From Mizuhopecten yessoensis (lineage: Eukaryota), in NCBI RefSeq assembly GCF_002113885.1, contig NW_018405634.1:37134-99907 (forward strand): DNA of 62,774 bases. Direction: 5' to 3'. The notes below the pieces were generated by a model. The model saw nothing but the letters and a program-made list of their open reading frames with translations. It ran no database searches and was not told where the DNA came from. The number at the start of each line of letters is the position of its first letter. Position 1 is the stretch's first letter. Positions 47,901 to 59,356 of the stretch are shown in pieces. A program made the position numbers and the translations under genes.

Positions 47901-49640
47901 GGTCATTGTAGGAGGGGTGTTGTGTGTCATTGTAGTAGGGGTGTTGTGTGTCATTGGGGGAGGGGTGTCGTGTGTCATTGTAGGAGGGGGGTTGTGTGTC
48001 ATTGGAGGAGGGGTTTTTGTGTGTCATTGGAGGAGGGGTGTTGTGGGTCAGTGGAGGAGGGGTGTTGTGTGTCATTGGAGCAGGGGTGTATGTGTGTCAT
48101 TGGAGGAAGGTTGTTGTGTGTCATTGGAGGAGGGGTGTTGTGGGTCAGTGGAGGAGGGGTGTTGTGTGTCATTGTAGGAAGGGTGTTGTGTGTCATTGTA
48201 GCTAATTAGATAAATACTACTGTAGTAGAACACCAAGGAAATAATGCTGTGAATTAACTCGAGGTGTATGTGTGTCATTAGAGGAGGGGTGTCTGTGTGT
48301 CCTTGGAGGAGGGGTGTATGTGTGTCATTGGAGGAAGGTTGTTGTGTGTCATTGGAGGAGGGGAGTTGTGTGTCATTGGAGGAGGGGTGGATGGGTGTCA
48401 TTGGAGGAGGGGTGTTGTGTGTCTATCCCGGGGTGTTGTGTGTCATTGGAGGAGGGGTGTTGGGTGTCATTGGAGGAGGGGTGTTGTGTGTCCTTGGAGG
48501 AGGGGTGTATGTGTGTCATTGGAGGAGGGGGGTTGTGTGTCATTGGAGGAGGGGTGTTGTGGGTCAGTGGAGGAGGGGTGTTGTGTGTCATTGTAGGAGG
48601 GGTGTTGTGTGGCATTGGAGGAGGGGTGTATGTGTGTCATTGGAGGGGGGGTGTTGTGTGTCATTGGAGGAGGGGTGTTGTGTGTCATTGTTGGAGGGGT
48701 GTTGTGTGTCATTGGAGGAGGGGTGTTGTGTGTCATTGGAGGAGGGGTGTTGTGTGTCATTGGAGGAGGGGTGTTGTGTGTCATTGGAGGAGGGGTGTCG
48801 TGGCAAAGAGATTCACGTTGTTGCATGCTTTTTGGGGGAGATAAAAGCTGATTTCATAATCACAATTGTTTATTAGAAAACGAAATGCATACATACTTGT
48901 CGAATAGATTTCCTGAATTCATCCCGAGACAACCTCCAGTTCTTGTCCTTGTCTGTTTGTGTAAACAAATCTATCAGTCTCATTTTGTTCCGTTTAAGAA
49001 ATAGGTCCAATATACGGATACCAAGTGGTGAGGGGACCTTGACACAGGGAACACTCTTGATTTCAGCACTAATGGGGGTCTCTGGGGGAGGAGCCATCTC
49101 CACCTCTTTTGGCATCCTCTCTTGCTCCATACGTCGCAGAACACGCTTCTCCAAGGCAGTTTTCTTTGGCTTATTTCTCAACCAGTCTTCACTGAGTCCC
49201 ATGTTTTCTATGTTATTTCGAAACTTCTGTCTTTCTTGGATCCATTTTTTGTATTGAAACTCTTTATCTTTTTCAACTTCTCTCTGAATTTCCTCTCGGT
49301 CATACTCAAGTTTATCCACTAAGGGCTCAGGAGGTTTCACCACAGTATTGATAATAAGTGGGGCAGGTTTAGGTTTCTGGTTTAAGTAACATCCCAGTCG
49401 GTGTCTCATCTTTGTTTCCATTGGAGGAGCAACAATGACCCTCTTTCTGCTGAGTGGGCCACCAAATATCTTCACTGCAGCCTTATAATGCTTGACATGT
49501 GGCAGGTCCCTGTGCTTGAATAGACCCATACGCTCATCCTCTGGGATGTGGTCAAGGTTGTATTCATCAAACAACCGATCAAGGGGGAAGCTGATATCTG
49601 AATCCATGGCGTCCAGCGCCCCACCCCTATGTGGTGGCAT
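32672..49640 (-). CDS. EFCAB12: EF-hand calcium-binding domain-containing protein 12-like; spliced CDS complement(join(32672..32945,40600..40909,42586..42796,45846..46258,46904..47099,48897..49640)), 2148 nt, 715 aa
   Basis: Six ORF segments are joined by GT-AG introns with consistent phases (0,1,0,1,2). There is a paired EF-hand (DKDKNWRLSRDEF / DENFDEELDYKEL). Motifs recalled from vertebrate EFCAB12 occur in the same order: RKRVIVAPP, WLRNKPKKTALE, IGDRAIDNHCMKSTLQG, LLHPPD, MTFEEYDKLT, NAFWPGHLMDRVRL. Confidence 0.9.
33085..34947. repeat. 33-bp minisatellite in the last EFCAB12 intron, containing an assembly gap (33347-33869)
   Basis: Unit ACAGACAAGTACACAGACAACCAATTATTGTCT. Confidence 0.97.
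35085..35608 (-). mobile_element. Second, truncated copy of the 26851-27817 Helentron-associated element
   Basis: Same internal repeats, (GACGCCG)n and terminal hairpin AGCTCACTT..GGTGAGTTAAAAA. Confidence 0.85.
35718..35995. repeat. 37-38-bp minisatellite, ~7 copies
   Basis: Unit GACCTCAAAATGTCACAAGGAAGTAGCTTATTTCCAA. Confidence 0.95.
36040..36290 (-). mobile_element. Penelope-like retroelement RT fragment
   Basis: The minus strand reads IYPSELEL ... FPFL/DHNIPPSPTYAIYMWNLIRYSRACSEYHDFRDR, typical of Penelope-like RT C-terminal regions. Confidence 0.75.
37071..37296. mobile_element. Small TA-flanked MITE (Tc1/mariner-like)
   Basis: TA|CTGTAAA ... TTTACAG|TA. Confidence 0.6.
37945..38995. 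repeat. 47-bp minisatellite, ~22 copies
   Basis: Unit GGGACATTTATCACTGGGGTAAATCTAGTTTACAGGTGATGACAGAA. Confidence 0.97.
39000..39910. repeat. ~0.9-kb purine-rich low-complexity tract
   Basis: Strong G/A excess on the plus strand with no fixed period. Confidence 0.85.
40600..40909 (-). CDS. EFCAB12: EFCAB12-like coding exon 5 (VLLHPPDHP...EEYDKLT)
   Basis: Acceptor ttcctttccag|TG (phase 1). Donor AAG|GTAATT (phase 2). Confidence 0.88.
41415..41502. mobile_element. 88-bp piggyBac-like MITE
   Basis: TTAA|TCCTTTCACC ... GGTGAAAGGG|TTAA. Confidence 0.7.
41505..42612 (-). repeat. 62-65-bp minisatellite made of the EFCAB12 exon-4 3' end plus splice donor, 18 copies
   Basis: Minus-strand unit ACCCTCAGTAAAGCCCTGCTAGAGAGAG|GTATGTACTTCAATAATATACAGGAGGGGACATC. 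The first copy is the real exon end. Confidence 0.95.
42586..42796 (-). CDS. EFCAB12: EFCAB12-like coding exon 4 (SPKKIQED...TLSKALLER)
   Basis: Acceptor gttgacag|TCC (phase 0). Donor GAG|GTATGT (phase 1). Conserved IDNHCMKSTLQG motif. Confidence 0.88.
43665..44220 (+). mobile_element. Non-autonomous element with subterminal inverted repeat and long 3' hairpin (Helentron/HINE-like architecture)
   Basis: TTTTTCTCGCACCT ... AGGTGCGAGAAAAA, then a ~145-bp hairpin TTACCTGTAACTGAGCGAGATCGG...CCGATCTCGCTCAGTTACAGGTAA. Inserted into a T-run of the minisatellite unit with no clear TSD. Confidence 0.7.
44290..44623 (-). mobile_element. tRNA-headed CORE-type SINE
   Basis: Minus strand shows a degenerate A/B-box head GGAGGCACGGTAGTCTAG..., CORE-like TCCTTCAGCAAGATACTTTACTC..CTGTAAATGGGTAC, an L2-like tail CGCTTTGAGAC and an (ATT)n end. 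Confidence 0.75.
45540..45692. repeat. ~27-bp minisatellite, ~6 copies
   Basis: Unit ACACACAGGTAATCCCACATCTAACTG. Confidence 0.85.
45846..46258 (-). CDS. EFCAB12: EFCAB12-like coding exon 3 (low-complexity S/G/K region, then FLHPPDIDTRPE...THKM)
   Basis: Acceptor tttttgtgccag|GG (phase 1). Donor ATG|GTAAGT (phase 0). Open frame of 137 codons. Confidence 0.85.
46904..47099 (-). CDS. EFCAB12: EFCAB12-like coding exon 2 (SKVPLSEP...TNSHA, second EF-hand)
   Basis: Acceptor ttacag|TCC (phase 0). Donor GCAG|GTATAC (phase 1) matches the next exon. Confidence 0.85.
47313..48800. repeat. 24-bp G-rich minisatellite in two blocks within an EFCAB12 intron
   Basis: Unit GTGTCATTGGAGGAGGGGTGTTGT. Interrupted at ~48200-48262 by a copy of the flank 47250-47312. 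Confidence 0.97.
48897..49640 (-). CDS. EFCAB12: EFCAB12-like coding exon 1 (MPPHRGG...RKSIRQ, 248 codons, includes first EF-hand)
   Basis: ATG at 49640 with an in-frame upstream TAG. Donor CAA|GTATGT after 48897 (phase 0). Acceptor tttgtttacag precedes 49738. Confidence 0.9.
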
Positions 49641-51870: not shown

Positions 51871-52260
51871 TTCAAAACAAGGGACGTAATGGTGTTGCAA
51901 GTTGTTCTAATTATCTCCCTTGTGCCTTGTAGTAGTGAAAAACAGCTCCTTACACAACGGATTTTATTGCAGTGAGTCGTTCACCGAAATTAAATATTAT
52001 ATTTTGTTCCACTTAATTGCATTAGCTCTTGGTCCATAGATACATGTAAGTCACTTTGATTTATAATTACTTGTAAATGGTGGAAATTAAAATGAAATTG
52101 TCAGTAGACGAAGGGGAACCTATTAGATTTATAAAAACGCGTTTGACACAGTGCCTCACCAACGTCTGTTAAAAAAACTACATGGAAATCAGAGGGAAAA
52201 TTCTGAACTGGATAAGAGCGTTTAAGAAGGAAACACAGCAAAAAGCTGTGGTACATGGAA

Positions 52261-52702
52261 GAGCGACCGGTTGGGCAAAAGTAAAATAAGCGGAGCACCC
52301 CATGGCAGATTTTATTCTTCCCGCGCGCGCATTGCGTCACGTCACAGGTAGTGGGAATCCGTGCTCCACGGATTCCACGTCTACCCGTGACCACTACCTG
52401 ACACGTCACCCGACCCACACACTCCAGCTATCACCCGTCGAGAGAGGAGCTCTCAATTGCACGTTACCAAGCATCACGCCATAGTCCCTGGTAAGTCTGT
52501 GTTTTATCATTACTTCATTCCATTTATATGTAGTCATATTCATGTCATTGTAAATAAGTGTATATGATAGGGTGTGTACAGCGAGAGTGTATTTATACCT
52601 GTTACATATTATTGTTACAGGATCCCTTGTACCCATCATCATCATCATCTACATTATTGAATAAAGACATCAAAGAATCATCAAATAGTCTCGAGTTCTA
52701 CA
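52261..52702 (+). mobile_element. LTR-like segment (5' boundary uncertain) followed by a tRNA-Lys PBS
   Basis: AATAAA at ~52660, ends ...GAGTTCTACA, then T plus a perfect TGGCGCCCAACGTGGGGC (52704-52721), the PBS for tRNA-Lys(CTT). Confidence 0.7.
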
Positions 52703-52726
52703 TTGGCGCCCAACGTGGGGCGCCAA

Positions 52727-53149
52727 TTTAACAGAGTGCATGATTAATTAAATATAAAGCACTGCCACCGCATGGGACCTCTGGCTTACTAGTCTTACGC
52801 TCAACCGATCGAGCTAAAGAGAAGTTCTCCCTAGCCGAGACGGTAGGAAGCGGCTAGTATTTTACCAGGTGACATTGGCGCCCACGTAGGGACCCGGGAG
52901 ATATGACAAAAATACTCAGCAATACTTGCAAAGGAATCTCTATGATCCCTGGAAAACTCGGGACGAGTTTTTTCTTAAAGGGGGAGTATGTCACCCTGGT
53001 AAAATACTAGCCGCTTCCTACCGTCTCGTCTAGGGAGAACTTCTCTTCAGCTCGATCGGTTGAGCGTAAGACTAGTAAGCCAGAGGTCCCGGGTTCGATC
53101 CCATGCGGAGGCAGTGATTTATATTTAATTAATCATGCGCTCTGTTACA
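52727..53149 (+). mobile_element. Miniature LTR retroelement (TRIM; Helenus-like, tRNA-derived LTRs) with its two LTRs in inverted orientation
   Basis: Left repeat 52727-52874 is the reverse complement of the right repeat 52989-53149 (TGTCACC...TGTTACA). Degenerate PBS at 52876. PPT AAAGGGGGAG at 52977-52986. tRNA-like A/B boxes at 53040-53113. Confidence 0.8.
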
Positions 53150-53602
53150 TTTATAAACGATTTACCAGAACATGCCGAAACAATAATCAGATTATTTGCA
53201 GACGACGCCAAATTGATAGACAGAGCAGGGTTACTACTGGAAACAGATAGAGTGCAAAGGGATGGAGATAAACTAGGAAACTGATCAGGAAAATGGCAAT
53301 TTAAATTCAATGCTGCTAGATGTAAATCACTACATATTGGTCACAACAATGGAAAAGTCTACAGTATGAAAGAAAATAGGACGGAGAAAGACATGGAGCA
53401 ATTTTGGGAATAAAAGGATTTTTGAGCAATTTTTGAATTCAACAAATATATCTGGTTGTGTGGCAAAAGTCTACAGTATGATAGGTATGGACAAGAACCT
53501 ATGTTAACCATTTACCACTAATAAGACCCAATGGTGCAAGCCAACGCTTGGTGAATACTGCGTAGAGCCGACATCGAAGGATCAAAAAGCAACGTCGCTA
53601 TG

Positions 53603-54043
53603 CAGGTCCAGTACACTCTGCCGATTGAGCTATATAGCTGTAAAGACCTATAATAGCTCTATTGACCTATCTGAAATAGGTCTTTTGAGCTATTTTCAAG
53701 TGATTTTCTTTTTTAAGGAAAACGAAACAAAGTCGCATTTAAAAGAAGATTGTATCATTAGGTTGATAACAATAGACATTAAAAATGAGTATTCTTTTTA
53801 AAAAATAATGATGTAAAAAAATCGGAAATTTTACATTTATGAAAAATGAAAATAAACATCTAACTGTATTCTTTTTGTAGTCAACATTACCATTAACCTT
53901 ACTGTTTTATGCGACTTTGCTTTAATTTAATGAAATTTGAAATCTGAGAAAATATAGCTCAATACAGCTATAATTTATAGGTGTATATAGCTATATAGGT
54001 CTTTATAGCTATATAGCTCAATCGGCAGAGTGTACTGGACCTG
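53603..54043. mobile_element. MITE with long TIRs and a 5-bp TSD (CTATG)
   Basis: CTATG|CAGGTCCAGTACACTCTGCCGATTGAGCTATATAGCT ... AGCTATATAGCTCAATCGGCAGAGTGTACTGGACCTG|CTATG. Confidence 0.9.
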
Positions 54044-59215: not shown

Positions 59216-59356
59216 TGTAGTACGGAAAACCCATTAAATAGTATTAGTGTACTCGTGTGACATTGGCGCCCAACGTGGGGCCCCGGGTAACACTGACAAG
59301 AATCGCTTTGACCTCTGCAAAAACTCGGGACGAGCTCTTACCTGGAGAGTTCTACA
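59216..59356 (+). mobile_element. 141-bp remnant of a miniature LTR element with a perfect tRNA-Lys PBS
   Basis: TGTAG...GTGACA-T-TGGCGCCCAACGTGGGGC(59264-59281)-CCCGGG..TGACAAGAAT..AAAACTCGGGACGAG..GAGTTCTACA. The internal part is similar to 52893-52976. Confidence 0.7.

What the first reader, a model, noticed from the sequence alone, without database searches (positions are those of the whole stretch)
52727..53149. Miniature LTR retroelement with tRNA-derived LTRs in inverted orientation
Seen: a 148-bp and a 161-bp repeat that are reverse complements of each other. The right copy reads TGTCACC...TGTTACA. They flank a ~115-bp core laid out like an LTR-element interior: T + PBS-Lys-like TGGCGCCCACGTAGGGAC, AAAACTCGGGACGAGTTTT, PPT AAAGGGGGAG, TA, then TGT. 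The repeat contains a tRNA-like Pol III cassette (A-box AGCTCGATCGG, loop CTAGTAA resembling tRNA-Thr(AGT), B-box GGTTCGATCCC). The left copy has lost 12 nt spanning the B-box between two TCCC repeats. Established: TRIMs with small-RNA-derived LTRs exist (Cassandra with 5S, Helenus with tRNA), and LTRs are normally direct repeats because strand transfer requires it. Inference: this is either a one-off inversion/template-switch product or a family of PBS/PPT-bearing, TIR-like elements with TG..CA ends that moves by a non-canonical route.
Basis: partly seen in the sequence, partly recalled or inferred. Interest (0 to 1): 0.8.

Follow-up and report, generated by a model that had tools for sequence, protein, structure and literature searches.

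The report
Rearranged copy of a known TRIM
This is one scrambled, dead copy of Helenus, a published family of tiny LTR retrotransposons with tRNA-like repeats in the Yesso scallop; a copying accident flipped its left repeat, and it is not a new kind of mobile element.

Summary
A 148-bp copy (52727-52874, minus) and a 161-bp copy (52989-53149, plus) of one LTR flank a 114-bp PBS-hairpin-PPT core. The left copy lacks 12 nt, including the B box.

The family is already published. Core and LTR match Helenus-1_MiYe and Helenus-3_MiYe (Kojima 2024, PMC10886601), described from an assembly of the same species. In this genome the LTR has about 1500 candidate copies. Every sampled element has direct LTRs, 4-bp target-site duplications and often tandem arrays.

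The inverted arrangement occurs once. No other locus spans either junction or the whole 423-bp unit.

Left of the inverted LTR lies a 22-nt PBS-PBS quasi-palindrome (52704-52725). It fuses the LTR head-to-head to a 5'-truncated LTR (52316-52702) of a Ty3/Gypsy element that uses a tRNA-Lys(CUU) PBS.

The inverted piece is exactly LTR plus PBS, the make-up of plus-strand strong-stop DNA. I read the locus as a one-off product of two template switches. One was guided by the PBS quasi-palindrome, the other by the LTR's terminal inverted repeat. Reverse transcription is the more likely setting; DNA repair or replication is the alternative.

No target-site duplication is visible. Short-read contigs from other animals support some junctions but not the palindrome. 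Interest is low.

The parts
52140..52319 (+). Left flank: decayed non-LTR (LINE) reverse-transcriptase fragment. Its last 4 nt (TCTT, 52316-52319) are shared with LTR_B as microhomology.
   Evidence: Related LINE copies L080-L083 (about 77-81% identity) carry both flanks next to each other. They read GATTTTAT-TCTT-AATC-TTTATAAACG, encoding GPILFLIFINDLP.
52316..52702 (+). LTR_B: the LTR of a Ty3/Gypsy-type retrotransposon, ending ...TTCTACA. It lacks the first 34 nt (TGTAACCAAGG...) of the roughly 420-425-bp full LTR.
   Evidence: About 10 copies at 93-96% identity. The alignment shows the missing 5' end. Other copies have 4-bp duplications (L056 TAAA, L060 TTTG). The copy on C2248 (L085) bounds an element of about 6.5 kb with PNMA-like gag, protease, RVT_1, RNase H and integrase zinc domain.
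52704..52725 (.). 22-nt PBS-PBS quasi-palindrome TGGCGCCCAACGTGGGGCGCCA. The plus strand holds an exact 18-nt tRNA-Lys(CUU) PBS (52704-52721) belonging to LTR_B. The minus strand holds the PBS (52725-52708) that follows the inverted Helenus LTR. The two overlap by 14 nt. Linker T at 52703 and A at 52726.
   Evidence: Direct reading and repeat I10. The exact 22-mer occurs only twice in 988 Mb, with 0 matches to the reversed control. The PBS matches the 3' end of a host tRNA-Lys(CTT) gene.
52727..52874 (-). Inverted Helenus LTR (148 bp). A-box motif intact, B box lost in a 12-nt deletion between TCCC repeats. On the minus strand it is followed canonically by a linker and a PBS.
   Evidence: It shares 11 non-majority states with the right copy and is its nearest relative (95.9% over ungapped columns).
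52875..52988 (+). Helenus-1_MiYe-type internal domain (114 bp): T, PBS for tRNA-Lys(UUU) at 52876-52893, conserved stem-loop 52953-52971, PPT 52977-52986, TA.
   Evidence: Direct reading. It matches the published 115-bp Helenus-1_MiYe-I sequence in Data S1 of PMC10886601. The PBS matches the 3' end of host tRNA-Lys(TTT) genes.
52989..53149 (+). Helenus 3' LTR (161 bp), TGTCACC...TGTTACA. The first 40 nt are identical to the published Helenus-1_MiYe LTR. The D-arm and 3' end are of Helenus-3_MiYe type. B box 53092-53102 is intact; the A-box motif carries a T>C change at 53048.
53150..53400 (+). Right flank: continuation of the same LINE reverse-transcriptase fragment (FINDLPEHAETIIRLFADDAKL). 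No target-site duplication with the left flank.
   Evidence: Contigs from three other studies cross 53149/53150 (X1 record 8, X12 record 16, X5 record 31).

Best explanation
The locus is a single, old, immobile, rearranged copy of the published scallop TRIM family Helenus. Its internal domain is of Helenus-1_MiYe type and its LTR is a Helenus-1/Helenus-3 mosaic.

Layout on the plus strand: [Gypsy LTR_B, 5'-truncated] - T - [PBS/PBS 22-nt quasi-palindrome] - A - [Helenus LTR, inverted] - T - PBS - core - PPT - TA - [Helenus LTR, direct].

Shown: every internal breakpoint falls on a natural end of a reverse-transcription intermediate. The inverted block is exactly LTR + linker + PBS, which is the make-up of plus-strand strong-stop DNA. 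LTR_B + T + 18-nt PBS has the same make-up.

Inferred mechanism:
1. A virus-like particle held both a Gypsy (LTR_B) template and a Helenus template.
2. Two plus-strand strong-stop DNAs annealed 3' end to 3' end through the nearly self-complementary tRNA-Lys(CUU) PBS (GCCCAACGTGGGGC, 12 of 14 pairs).
3. Extension gave LTR_B-PBS/PBS-inverted Helenus LTR.
4. The new 3' end (...GTGACA) looks like a U5 end (...GTTACA) because the LTR has terminal inverted repeats. It switched onto the PBS end of a Helenus minus strand and copied PBS-core-PPT-LTR.
5. The composite entered a LINE fragment. Its left end was then lost or truncated at a TCTT microhomology.

The element does not transpose in this form.
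For: Family identity:
- Core and LTR match Helenus-1_MiYe and Helenus-3_MiYe in Data S1 and Table S1 of PMC10886601.
- Sampled canonical copies have LTRs of 159 bp in direct orientation, internal domains of about 105-125 bp, tandem arrays, and 4-bp duplications (L009 TACA, L013 ATAA, L018 TATA).

Uniqueness:
- Only the window spans the inverted-LTR|PBS junction.
- Only the window spans the palindrome|LTR junction.
- Only the window matches the whole 423-bp unit; all other best hits cover PBS-core-LTR on one strand.

One source for both LTRs: they share 11 non-majority states and are each other's nearest relative.

Breakpoints at natural cDNA ends:
- Exact 18-nt PBS, then GCCA-A, then the LTR end.
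- The inverted LTR is flanked by 15-nt inverted repeats made of PBS start plus LTR terminus (I12).

Evidence that these templates mix:
- C5424 (L044) carries the direct chimera LTR_B-PBS-Helenus-3 core-PPT-Helenus-3 LTR-PBS.
- The window LTR is itself a Helenus-1/3 mosaic.

Recurrence of the PBS palindrome: a second exact 22-mer at C5578 sits inside a 42-nt palindrome after a third LTR family.

PBS identities are confirmed against host tRNA-Lys(CTT) and tRNA-Lys(TTT) genes.

An independent run holds a contig across the inverted-LTR|PBS junction (X1 record 5, 39+28 nt) and the inverted copy with its 12-nt deletion (X1 record 4).
Against: - The order of events is inferred, not observed. A DNA-level process using the same microhomologies predicts the same sequence.
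- No target-site duplication is visible and LTR_B lacks its 5' end. Integrase-mediated entry of the composite as one cDNA therefore cannot be shown.
- The Helenus PBS at 52876 is of tRNA-Lys(UUU) type. That type pairs poorly with the CUU-type PBS. The model needs the Helenus strong-stop DNA to have carried a CUU-type PBS copy, as the Helenus LTR on L044 does.
- No listed contig crosses the palindrome (52703-52728) in any of four runs.
- No long reads were available.
Confidence: 0.5

Rival explanations
1. Same one-off product, made at the DNA level after integration. A canonical chimeric or tandem array (LTR_B-PBS-core-PPT-LTR-PBS-core-PPT-LTR) was rearranged by foldback priming or replication template switching (MMBIR-like). 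The switches used the PBS quasi-palindrome and the LTR terminal inverted repeats. One core-PPT was deleted and the middle LTR inverted.
For: A direct array of this kind exists at C5424, and tandem Helenus arrays are common. Foldback inversions of 2 to about 150 bp, primed at short inverted microhomologies at breaks, are documented in yeast (PMC11724301). The left boundary shows a TCTT microhomology with no duplication, which is a repair-type junction.
Against: It needs a specific ancestral array at this site plus two switches that both land exactly on LTR/PBS boundaries. Foldback copying of a chromosomal 3' LTR should run into the flank (TTTAT...). Instead the copy stops at the LTR end and continues with a PBS. 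The inverted unit is exactly strong-stop-DNA-shaped.
Confidence: 0.33
2. Assembly artefact. The short-read assembler joined repeat copies wrongly at the near-palindromic PBS or inside the roughly 1500-copy LTR.
For: The genome is highly fragmented (82,659 contigs). The LTR is highly repeated. No listed contig crosses 52703-52728. Depth there is near zero in three of four runs. Three runs diverge from the window after 52319.
Against: The two arms differ by 6 substitutions and 2 indels, so they were not collapsed. A contig from an independent 2022 study crosses the inverted-LTR|PBS junction (X1 record 5). Another reproduces the inverted copy with its private 12-nt deletion without any difference (X1 record 4). 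The right junction is seen in three further studies. A second PBS palindrome exists elsewhere.
Confidence: 0.08
3. Nested independent insertions followed by deletions. A minus-strand Helenus or solo LTR was inserted by integrase next to a plus-strand Helenus and a Gypsy LTR, and the rest was deleted.
For: Nested and tandem TRIM insertions are frequent in this genome.
Against: The 4 nt flanking the inverted LTR are CCAA and TTGG. These are reverse complements, not a direct duplication. All three internal boundaries coincide to the base with LTR ends or PBS ends, which random deletions would not produce. The two LTRs are each other's closest relatives.
Confidence: 0.05
4. A new TIR-like PBS/PPT element that transposes with inverted LTRs by a non-canonical route.
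For: The LTR termini are inverted repeats (TGTAAC...GTTACA). Both outer ends of an inverted pair would therefore end in CA and could in principle be used by integrase.
Against: No second copy of either junction or of the unit exists among the best-scoring candidates in 988 Mb. There is no target-site duplication. The left arm is fused to another LTR rather than to host DNA. Each arm has lost one Pol III box.
Confidence: 0.02

Closest known systems
Helenus-1_MiYe and Helenus-3_MiYe (Helenus TRIMs of Mizuhopecten yessoensis; Kojima 2024, PMC10886601)
   Same: The same sequences. The 114-bp core matches Helenus-1_MiYe-I (115 bp). The first 40 nt of the LTR are identical to the Helenus-1_MiYe LTR, and the rest is of Helenus-3_MiYe type (159 bp). 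Also shared: tRNA-like A and B boxes in the LTR, a tRNA-Lys PBS, a PPT, and 4-bp duplications in canonical copies.
   Different: In this copy the 5' LTR is inverted and fused through a PBS palindrome to a Gypsy LTR. There is no duplication. The paper's main text does not mention inverted copies (0 occurrences of 'inverted').
Cassandra (plant TRIM with 5S rRNA-like LTRs) and Ajax
   Same: They share the TRIMp3 idea: a TRIM whose LTRs carry a small-RNA Pol III promoter (PMC10886601).
   Different: They carry a 5S-derived cassette rather than a tRNA-derived one. Cassandra is found in plants and Ajax in nemertean worms, and both give 5-bp duplications. There is no sequence relation.
biv-TRIM (Satovic et al. 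2019, PMC6934838)
   Same: A TRIM of bivalves with solo repeats and tandem arrays.
   Different: biv-TRIM has no recognisable tRNA PBS. The family here has exact tRNA-Lys PBSs and tRNA-like LTRs, so it is a different family.
Plus-strand strong-stop DNA and aberrant strand transfers of retroviruses and LTR retrotransposons (textbook knowledge, not tested here)
   Same: The inverted block equals U3-R-U5 plus an 18-nt PBS copy. The junctions lie at the 3' end of the PBS copy and the 5' end of U3.
   Different: Normal transfer pairs PBS(+) with PBS(-). Here two PBS(+) ends appear to have paired through the near-palindrome. I found no paper describing this.
Foldback inversions at DNA breaks (PMC11724301)
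   Same: An inverted duplication primed at a short inverted microhomology, with capture of the other end at 0-5 bp of microhomology.
   Different: Those events copy local chromosomal sequence. Here the copied unit has retroelement-intermediate boundaries and joins two different LTR families.

Membership tests
Helenus (TRIM with tRNA-like LTRs; Kojima 2024) | Sequence identity to a named Helenus family of the same species | tested here: met
   The core matches Helenus-1_MiYe-I. The LTR matches the Helenus-1_MiYe LTR at its 5' end and the Helenus-3_MiYe LTR over the rest. This was read by eye against Data S1 of PMC10886601, with no computed alignment. Genome copies of 159 bp (LTR) and about 107 bp (core) fit Table S1.
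Helenus (TRIM with tRNA-like LTRs; Kojima 2024) | tRNA-like sequence with box A (TRGCY...YGG) and box B (GGTTC) in the LTR | tested here: met
   41 of 45 copies keep the A motif and 39 of 45 keep the B motif (these counts include the two window copies). In the window the right copy has B intact and A mutated (T>C), and the left copy has A intact and B deleted. No copy is called as a tRNA by ARAGORN or Rfam, in line with the paper's view that most are non-functional.
Helenus (TRIM with tRNA-like LTRs; Kojima 2024) | Two direct LTRs around a short PBS...PPT internal domain, with no ORF | tested here: not met
   Met by the family. Not met by this copy, whose 5' LTR is inverted. This copy is a rearranged derivative, not a canonical member.
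Helenus (TRIM with tRNA-like LTRs; Kojima 2024) | 4-bp target-site duplication (animal Helenus) | tested here: not met
   Canonical copies have 4-bp duplications: L009 TACA, L013 ATAA, L018 TATA. The window composite has none. Its flanks read ...GATTTTAT[TCTT] and TTTATAAACG, with AATC of the LINE missing.
Helenus (TRIM with tRNA-like LTRs; Kojima 2024) | PBS complementary to the 3' end of a host tRNA | tested here: met
   The reverse complement of 52876-52893 equals the 3' end (plus CCA) of host genes typed tRNA-Lys(ttt) (L089, L090). The reverse complement of 52704-52721 equals that of tRNA-Lys(ctt) (L087).
   Junction and whole-unit searches of the 988-Mb genome return only the window itself. 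Only the best 40 candidates per search are scored, but a full-length copy would rank first.
   The left arm abuts a PBS palindrome and another LTR, not host DNA. The 4 nt on either side of the inverted LTR are CCAA and TTGG.
Ty3/Gypsy LTR retrotransposon (for LTR_B) | LTR-bounded element encoding gag, protease, RT, RNase H and integrase, in that order | tested here: met
   L085 carries PNMA-like gag, gag-asp_proteas (weak hit, 22.2 bits, below Pfam's cut-off of 28.2), RVT_1, RT_RNaseH and Integrase_H2C2 on the strand of LTR_B. That copy's 3' LTR is only a fragment.

The most novel reading that the evidence does not exclude
The nearly self-complementary tRNA-Lys(CUU) primer-binding site lets two plus-strand strong-stop DNAs prime on each other. 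This would give head-to-head LTR-PBS-PBS-LTR molecules that occasionally reach the germline. The window and C5578 would be genomic fossils of this otherwise undescribed failure mode of plus-strand transfer. It would also show co-packaging of a Gypsy element with its Helenus parasite.
Probability: 0.35. Interest if true: 0.4.

Novelty: already known. Interest (0 to 1): 0.2.

Why it matters
It matters little for element discovery. The TRIM family, its tRNA-like LTRs, its PBS and its 4-bp duplications are all published for this species. The copy is a useful warning that an inverted-LTR look can come from a single rearranged insertion.

Two smaller points have some value:
- The breakpoints sit exactly on strong-stop-DNA ends, and the PBS-PBS palindrome recurs at a second locus. 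Together these hint at a specific failure mode of plus-strand transfer for elements primed by tRNA-Lys(CUU).
- The physical fusion of a Gypsy LTR with Helenus parts, here and at C5424, is circumstantial evidence for which autonomous element mobilises Helenus-1/3 in scallops.

Tried and rejected
- **tRNA call in the LTR.** ARAGORN on the window and on 23 loci, and Rfam at E<=10 on 1 kb and on 101 nt, returned nothing. I kept only "tRNA-like boxes".
- **5-bp duplication TTTAT (52311-52315 / 53150-53154).** Rejected. The family makes 4-bp duplications. Related LINE copies also show that TCTT after TTTAT belongs to the LINE, so the match is part of the target sequence and not a duplication.
- **Integrase insertion of a minus-strand solo LTR.** Rejected. 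The flanks are CCAA and TTGG.
- **Simple inversion of the 5' LTR between its own terminal repeats.** This does not remove the non-canonical junction. It only moves it to the other side, so it explains less than two template switches.
- **biv-TRIM identity.** Rejected. biv-TRIM has no PBS.
- **Right-flank search.** The tool failed as busy and I did not repeat it, because loci L080-L083 already gave both flanks.
- **Literature on PBS palindromes or head-to-head strong-stop dimers.** Nothing specific was found.
- **Long-read confirmation.** Not possible. All served runs were short-read contigs, and both the run search and read laying are limited to one call each.
- **Consensus or repair.** Only natural copies and the published sequences were compared.

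Full report
**1. Observation**

The repeat finder reports arms 52774-52869/52995-53090 (96 nt, 98% complementary) and 52725-52777/53099-53151 (53 nt, 92%). blastn joins them into one 164-column alignment interrupted by a 12-nt gap.

Direct reading confirms the layout:
- Right copy TGTCACC...TGTTACA, 52989-53149.
- Its reverse complement, 52727-52874.
- A 114-bp interior with T + TGGCGCCCACGTAGGGAC (52876-52893), the stem-loop AAAACTCGGGACGAGTTTT (52953-52971), AAAGGGGGAG (52977-52986) and TA.
- The left copy lacks GGGTTCGATCCC between two TCCC repeats.

The tRNA likeness is partial. The D-arm/A-box and T-arm/B-box regions are recognisable. ARAGORN finds no tRNA in the window or in 23 related loci. 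Rfam gives no tRNA match at E<=10.

**2. The family is known and canonical**

The window lies in a 988-Mb eukaryotic genome of 82,659 contigs. The right LTR has about 1500 first-look candidates.

In the loci fetched, the element is an ordinary TRIM:
- LTRs of 159 bp, TGTAACCC...CTGTTACA, in direct orientation.
- An internal domain of about 105-125 bp.
- Frequent tandem arrays of LTR-core-LTR-core-LTR, up to four LTRs.
- 4-bp target-site duplications (L009 TACA, L013 ATAA, L018 TATA).

Kojima 2024 (PMC10886601) described exactly this kind of element as Helenus: TRIMs with a tRNA-like sequence in the LTR, 4-bp duplications in animals, and tRNA-Lys among the PBS types in bivalves. Its Table 1 and Table S1 list Mizuhopecten yessoensis, assembly ASM211388v2, with Helenus-1 to Helenus-4_MiYe.

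Comparing the sequences printed from its Data S1 by eye with the window:
- The core is Helenus-1_MiYe-I (115 bp).
- The first 40 nt of the LTR are identical to the Helenus-1_MiYe LTR.
- The D-arm and the last 50 nt or so are of Helenus-3_MiYe type.

The genome hits agree. Helenus-1-type copies match PBS-core-LTR up to LTR position 129, and Helenus-3-type copies match the whole LTR. The window copy therefore belongs to a Helenus-1/3 mosaic lineage. The match also identifies the organism as the Yesso scallop.

I confirmed the primer assignment in this genome. The reverse complement of the core's PBS is the 3' end of genes that ARAGORN types as tRNA-Lys(ttt). The reverse complement of the upstream PBS is the 3' end of a tRNA-Lys(ctt) gene.

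**3. The inverted layout is unique**

An 81-nt query across the inverted-LTR|PBS junction (52835-52915) matches over its full length only in the window. Every other hit covers one half only, in the pattern expected of canonical elements.

The same holds for a 111-nt query across the left junction and for the whole 423-bp unit.

Only the best 40 candidates are scored per search, so counts are lower bounds. A second full-length copy would nevertheless have ranked first.

It is met.

**4.

Immediately left of the inverted LTR the sequence reads ...TTCTACA-T-TGGCGCCCAACGTGGGGCGCCA-A-TTTAACAG... (52696-52734).

- On the plus strand this is the end of another LTR, then T, then an exact 18-nt tRNA-Lys(CUU) PBS.
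- On the minus strand it is the end of the inverted Helenus LTR, then T, then a PBS.
- The two PBSs overlap by 14 nt in a 22-nt quasi-palindrome (I10).

The upstream LTR ("LTR_B", 52316-52702) has about 10 copies at 93-96% identity. In full it starts TGTAACCAAGG... and gives 4-bp duplications. On C2248 it bounds an element of about 6.5 kb with PNMA-like gag, a weak protease hit, RT, RNase H and integrase zinc domain, which is the Ty3/Gypsy domain order. In the window it lacks its first 34 nt.

The two Helenus LTRs in the window share 11 states that are in the minority among 43 other copies. They are each other's closest relative, at 95.9%. The next best, L002, is nearly as close at 95% and 93%.

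**5. Insertion site**

The composite (52316-53149) interrupts a decayed LINE reverse-transcriptase fragment. Related LINE copies at about 77-81% identity read GATTTTAT-TCTT-AATC-TTTATAAACG, encoding GPILFLIFINDLP.

The window reads GATTTTAT-[TCTT]-CCCGCG(LTR_B)...(Helenus LTR)TGTTACA|TTTATAAACG.

- The right end is exactly the LTR terminus.
- The left end lies in a 4-nt microhomology.
- AATC of the target is missing.
- No duplication is present.

Two histories fit. In the first, the composite was captured or joined with a truncated left end. In the second, integrase inserted it normally with a TTTA duplication, and a later deletion of about 45 bp between two TCCC-like TCTT repeats removed the duplication and the LTR_B start. 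I cannot decide between them.

**6. Mechanism (inferred)**

All three internal breakpoints coincide with natural ends of reverse-transcription intermediates. The inverted block is U3-R-U5 + linker + PBS, which is plus-strand strong-stop DNA. LTR_B + T + 18-nt PBS is the same kind of molecule.

The CUU-type PBS is nearly self-complementary: GCCCAACGTGGGGC pairs with itself at 12 of 14 positions.

My preferred model runs as follows:
1. Two strong-stop DNAs, one from a Gypsy template and one from a Helenus template, anneal 3' end to 3' end.
2. They are extended, giving LTR_B-PBS/PBS-inverted Helenus LTR.
3. The new 3' end, ...GTGACA, mimics a U5 end (...GTTACA) because the LTR has terminal inverted repeats.
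4. That end switches to the PBS end of a Helenus minus strand and copies PBS-core-PPT-LTR.

Supporting observations:
- A direct chimera, LTR_B-PBS-Helenus-3 core-PPT-Helenus-3 LTR-PBS, exists at C5424. So these two kinds of template do recombine.
- The window LTR is itself a mosaic.
- The exact 22-mer palindrome occurs only once more in the genome, against 0 matches to the reversed control. At C5578 it lies in a 42-nt palindrome after a third LTR family of 194 bp.

One weakness is that the Helenus PBS in the window is of UUU type, which pairs poorly with the CUU type. The Helenus strong-stop DNA would have had to carry a CUU-type PBS copy, as the Helenus LTR at C5424 does.

A DNA-level process would give the same sequence from a pre-existing array. 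Foldback priming or replication template switching at the same microhomologies are candidates, as documented for breaks in yeast (PMC11724301). I rate this only somewhat less likely. Such a process has no reason to stop copying exactly at LTR and PBS ends.

**7. Is the locus real?**

Only short-read contigs were available.

Supported by independent runs:
- In a 2022 study, one contig (X1 record 5, 52836-52902, one difference) crosses the inverted-LTR|PBS junction with 39 + 28 nt. This is just under the tool's 31-nt rule.
- Another contig (X1 record 4, 52729-52802, no difference) reproduces the inverted copy with its private deletion.
- The right junction is crossed in three further studies: X1 record 8, X12 record 16 and X5 record 31.

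Not supported:
- The left LINE|LTR_B junction is crossed only in X2, a 2016 run that is probably the assembled animal.
- No listed contig crosses the palindrome.
- In X1, X5 and X12 the flank contig departs from the window right after 52319 for 36 unprinted letters. This is unexplained (note).

An assembly artefact at the palindrome is therefore not excluded, though the inverted LTR next to the PBS is independently supported.

**8. State of the copy**

Each arm has lost one Pol III box. The A-box motif of the right arm carries T>C at 53048, and the B box of the left arm is deleted. The arms differ by 6 substitutions and 2 indels. The copy is old and inert.

**9. Verdict**

The element type is already published for this species. 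The inverted layout is a one-off rearrangement and not a new mobile class. The only mildly new point is the suggestion that a quasi-palindromic tRNA-Lys PBS can cause head-to-head joining of strong-stop DNAs.

Noticed in passing
window 59257-59350: Another LTR end (GTGTGACA) + T + exact tRNA-Lys(CUU) PBS + an 88-nt Helenus-like internal domain. It has the same AAAACTCGGGACGAG stem and a weak PPT. No ORF of 100 aa or more lies downstream.
   Followed up: partly
window 53603-53900 (arms 53630-53696 / 53946-53998): A very high-copy MITE-like repeat with 752 first-look candidates at 95-98% identity and its own inverted arms.
   Followed up: no
L044 1258-1861 (G000:C5424:1197540-1198165, minus strand): A direct chimeric element: Gypsy LTR_B - PBS(CUU type) - Helenus-3 internal domain - PPT - Helenus-3 LTR - PBS(CUU type) - unrelated sequence.
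   Followed up: partly
L084 928-969 (G000:C5578:829327-829368): The second PBS-PBS palindrome in the genome. It reads GGGGTACA-AA-[22-mer]-TG-TGTACCCC, 42 nt in all, directly after a 194-bp LTR of a third family and followed by an unrelated repeat. It looks like a snap-back at the same PBS.
   Followed up: partly
L085 524-7085 (G000:C2248:202524-209085, minus strand): A Ty3/Gypsy-type element of about 6.5 kb carrying LTR_B, with PNMA-like gag, a weak protease hit, RVT_1, RNase H and integrase zinc domain. Its 3' LTR is only a fragment. It is a candidate autonomous partner of Helenus-1/3.
   Followed up: partly
window 52250-52345: In three non-reference runs the contig carrying the left flank stops fitting the window at 52319 and runs on for 36 letters that were not shown. 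This may be a full-length LTR_B allele or an empty-site allele.
   Followed up: no
L088 97-171 (G000:C3085): A gene with the tRNA-Lys(CUU)-type 3' end is typed by ARAGORN as tRNA-Glu(ctc). It is probably a Lys-derived gene with a changed anticodon.
   Followed up: no
window 48873-49640 (minus): A 255-aa ORF that looks like a host exon. I did not examine either.
   Followed up: no
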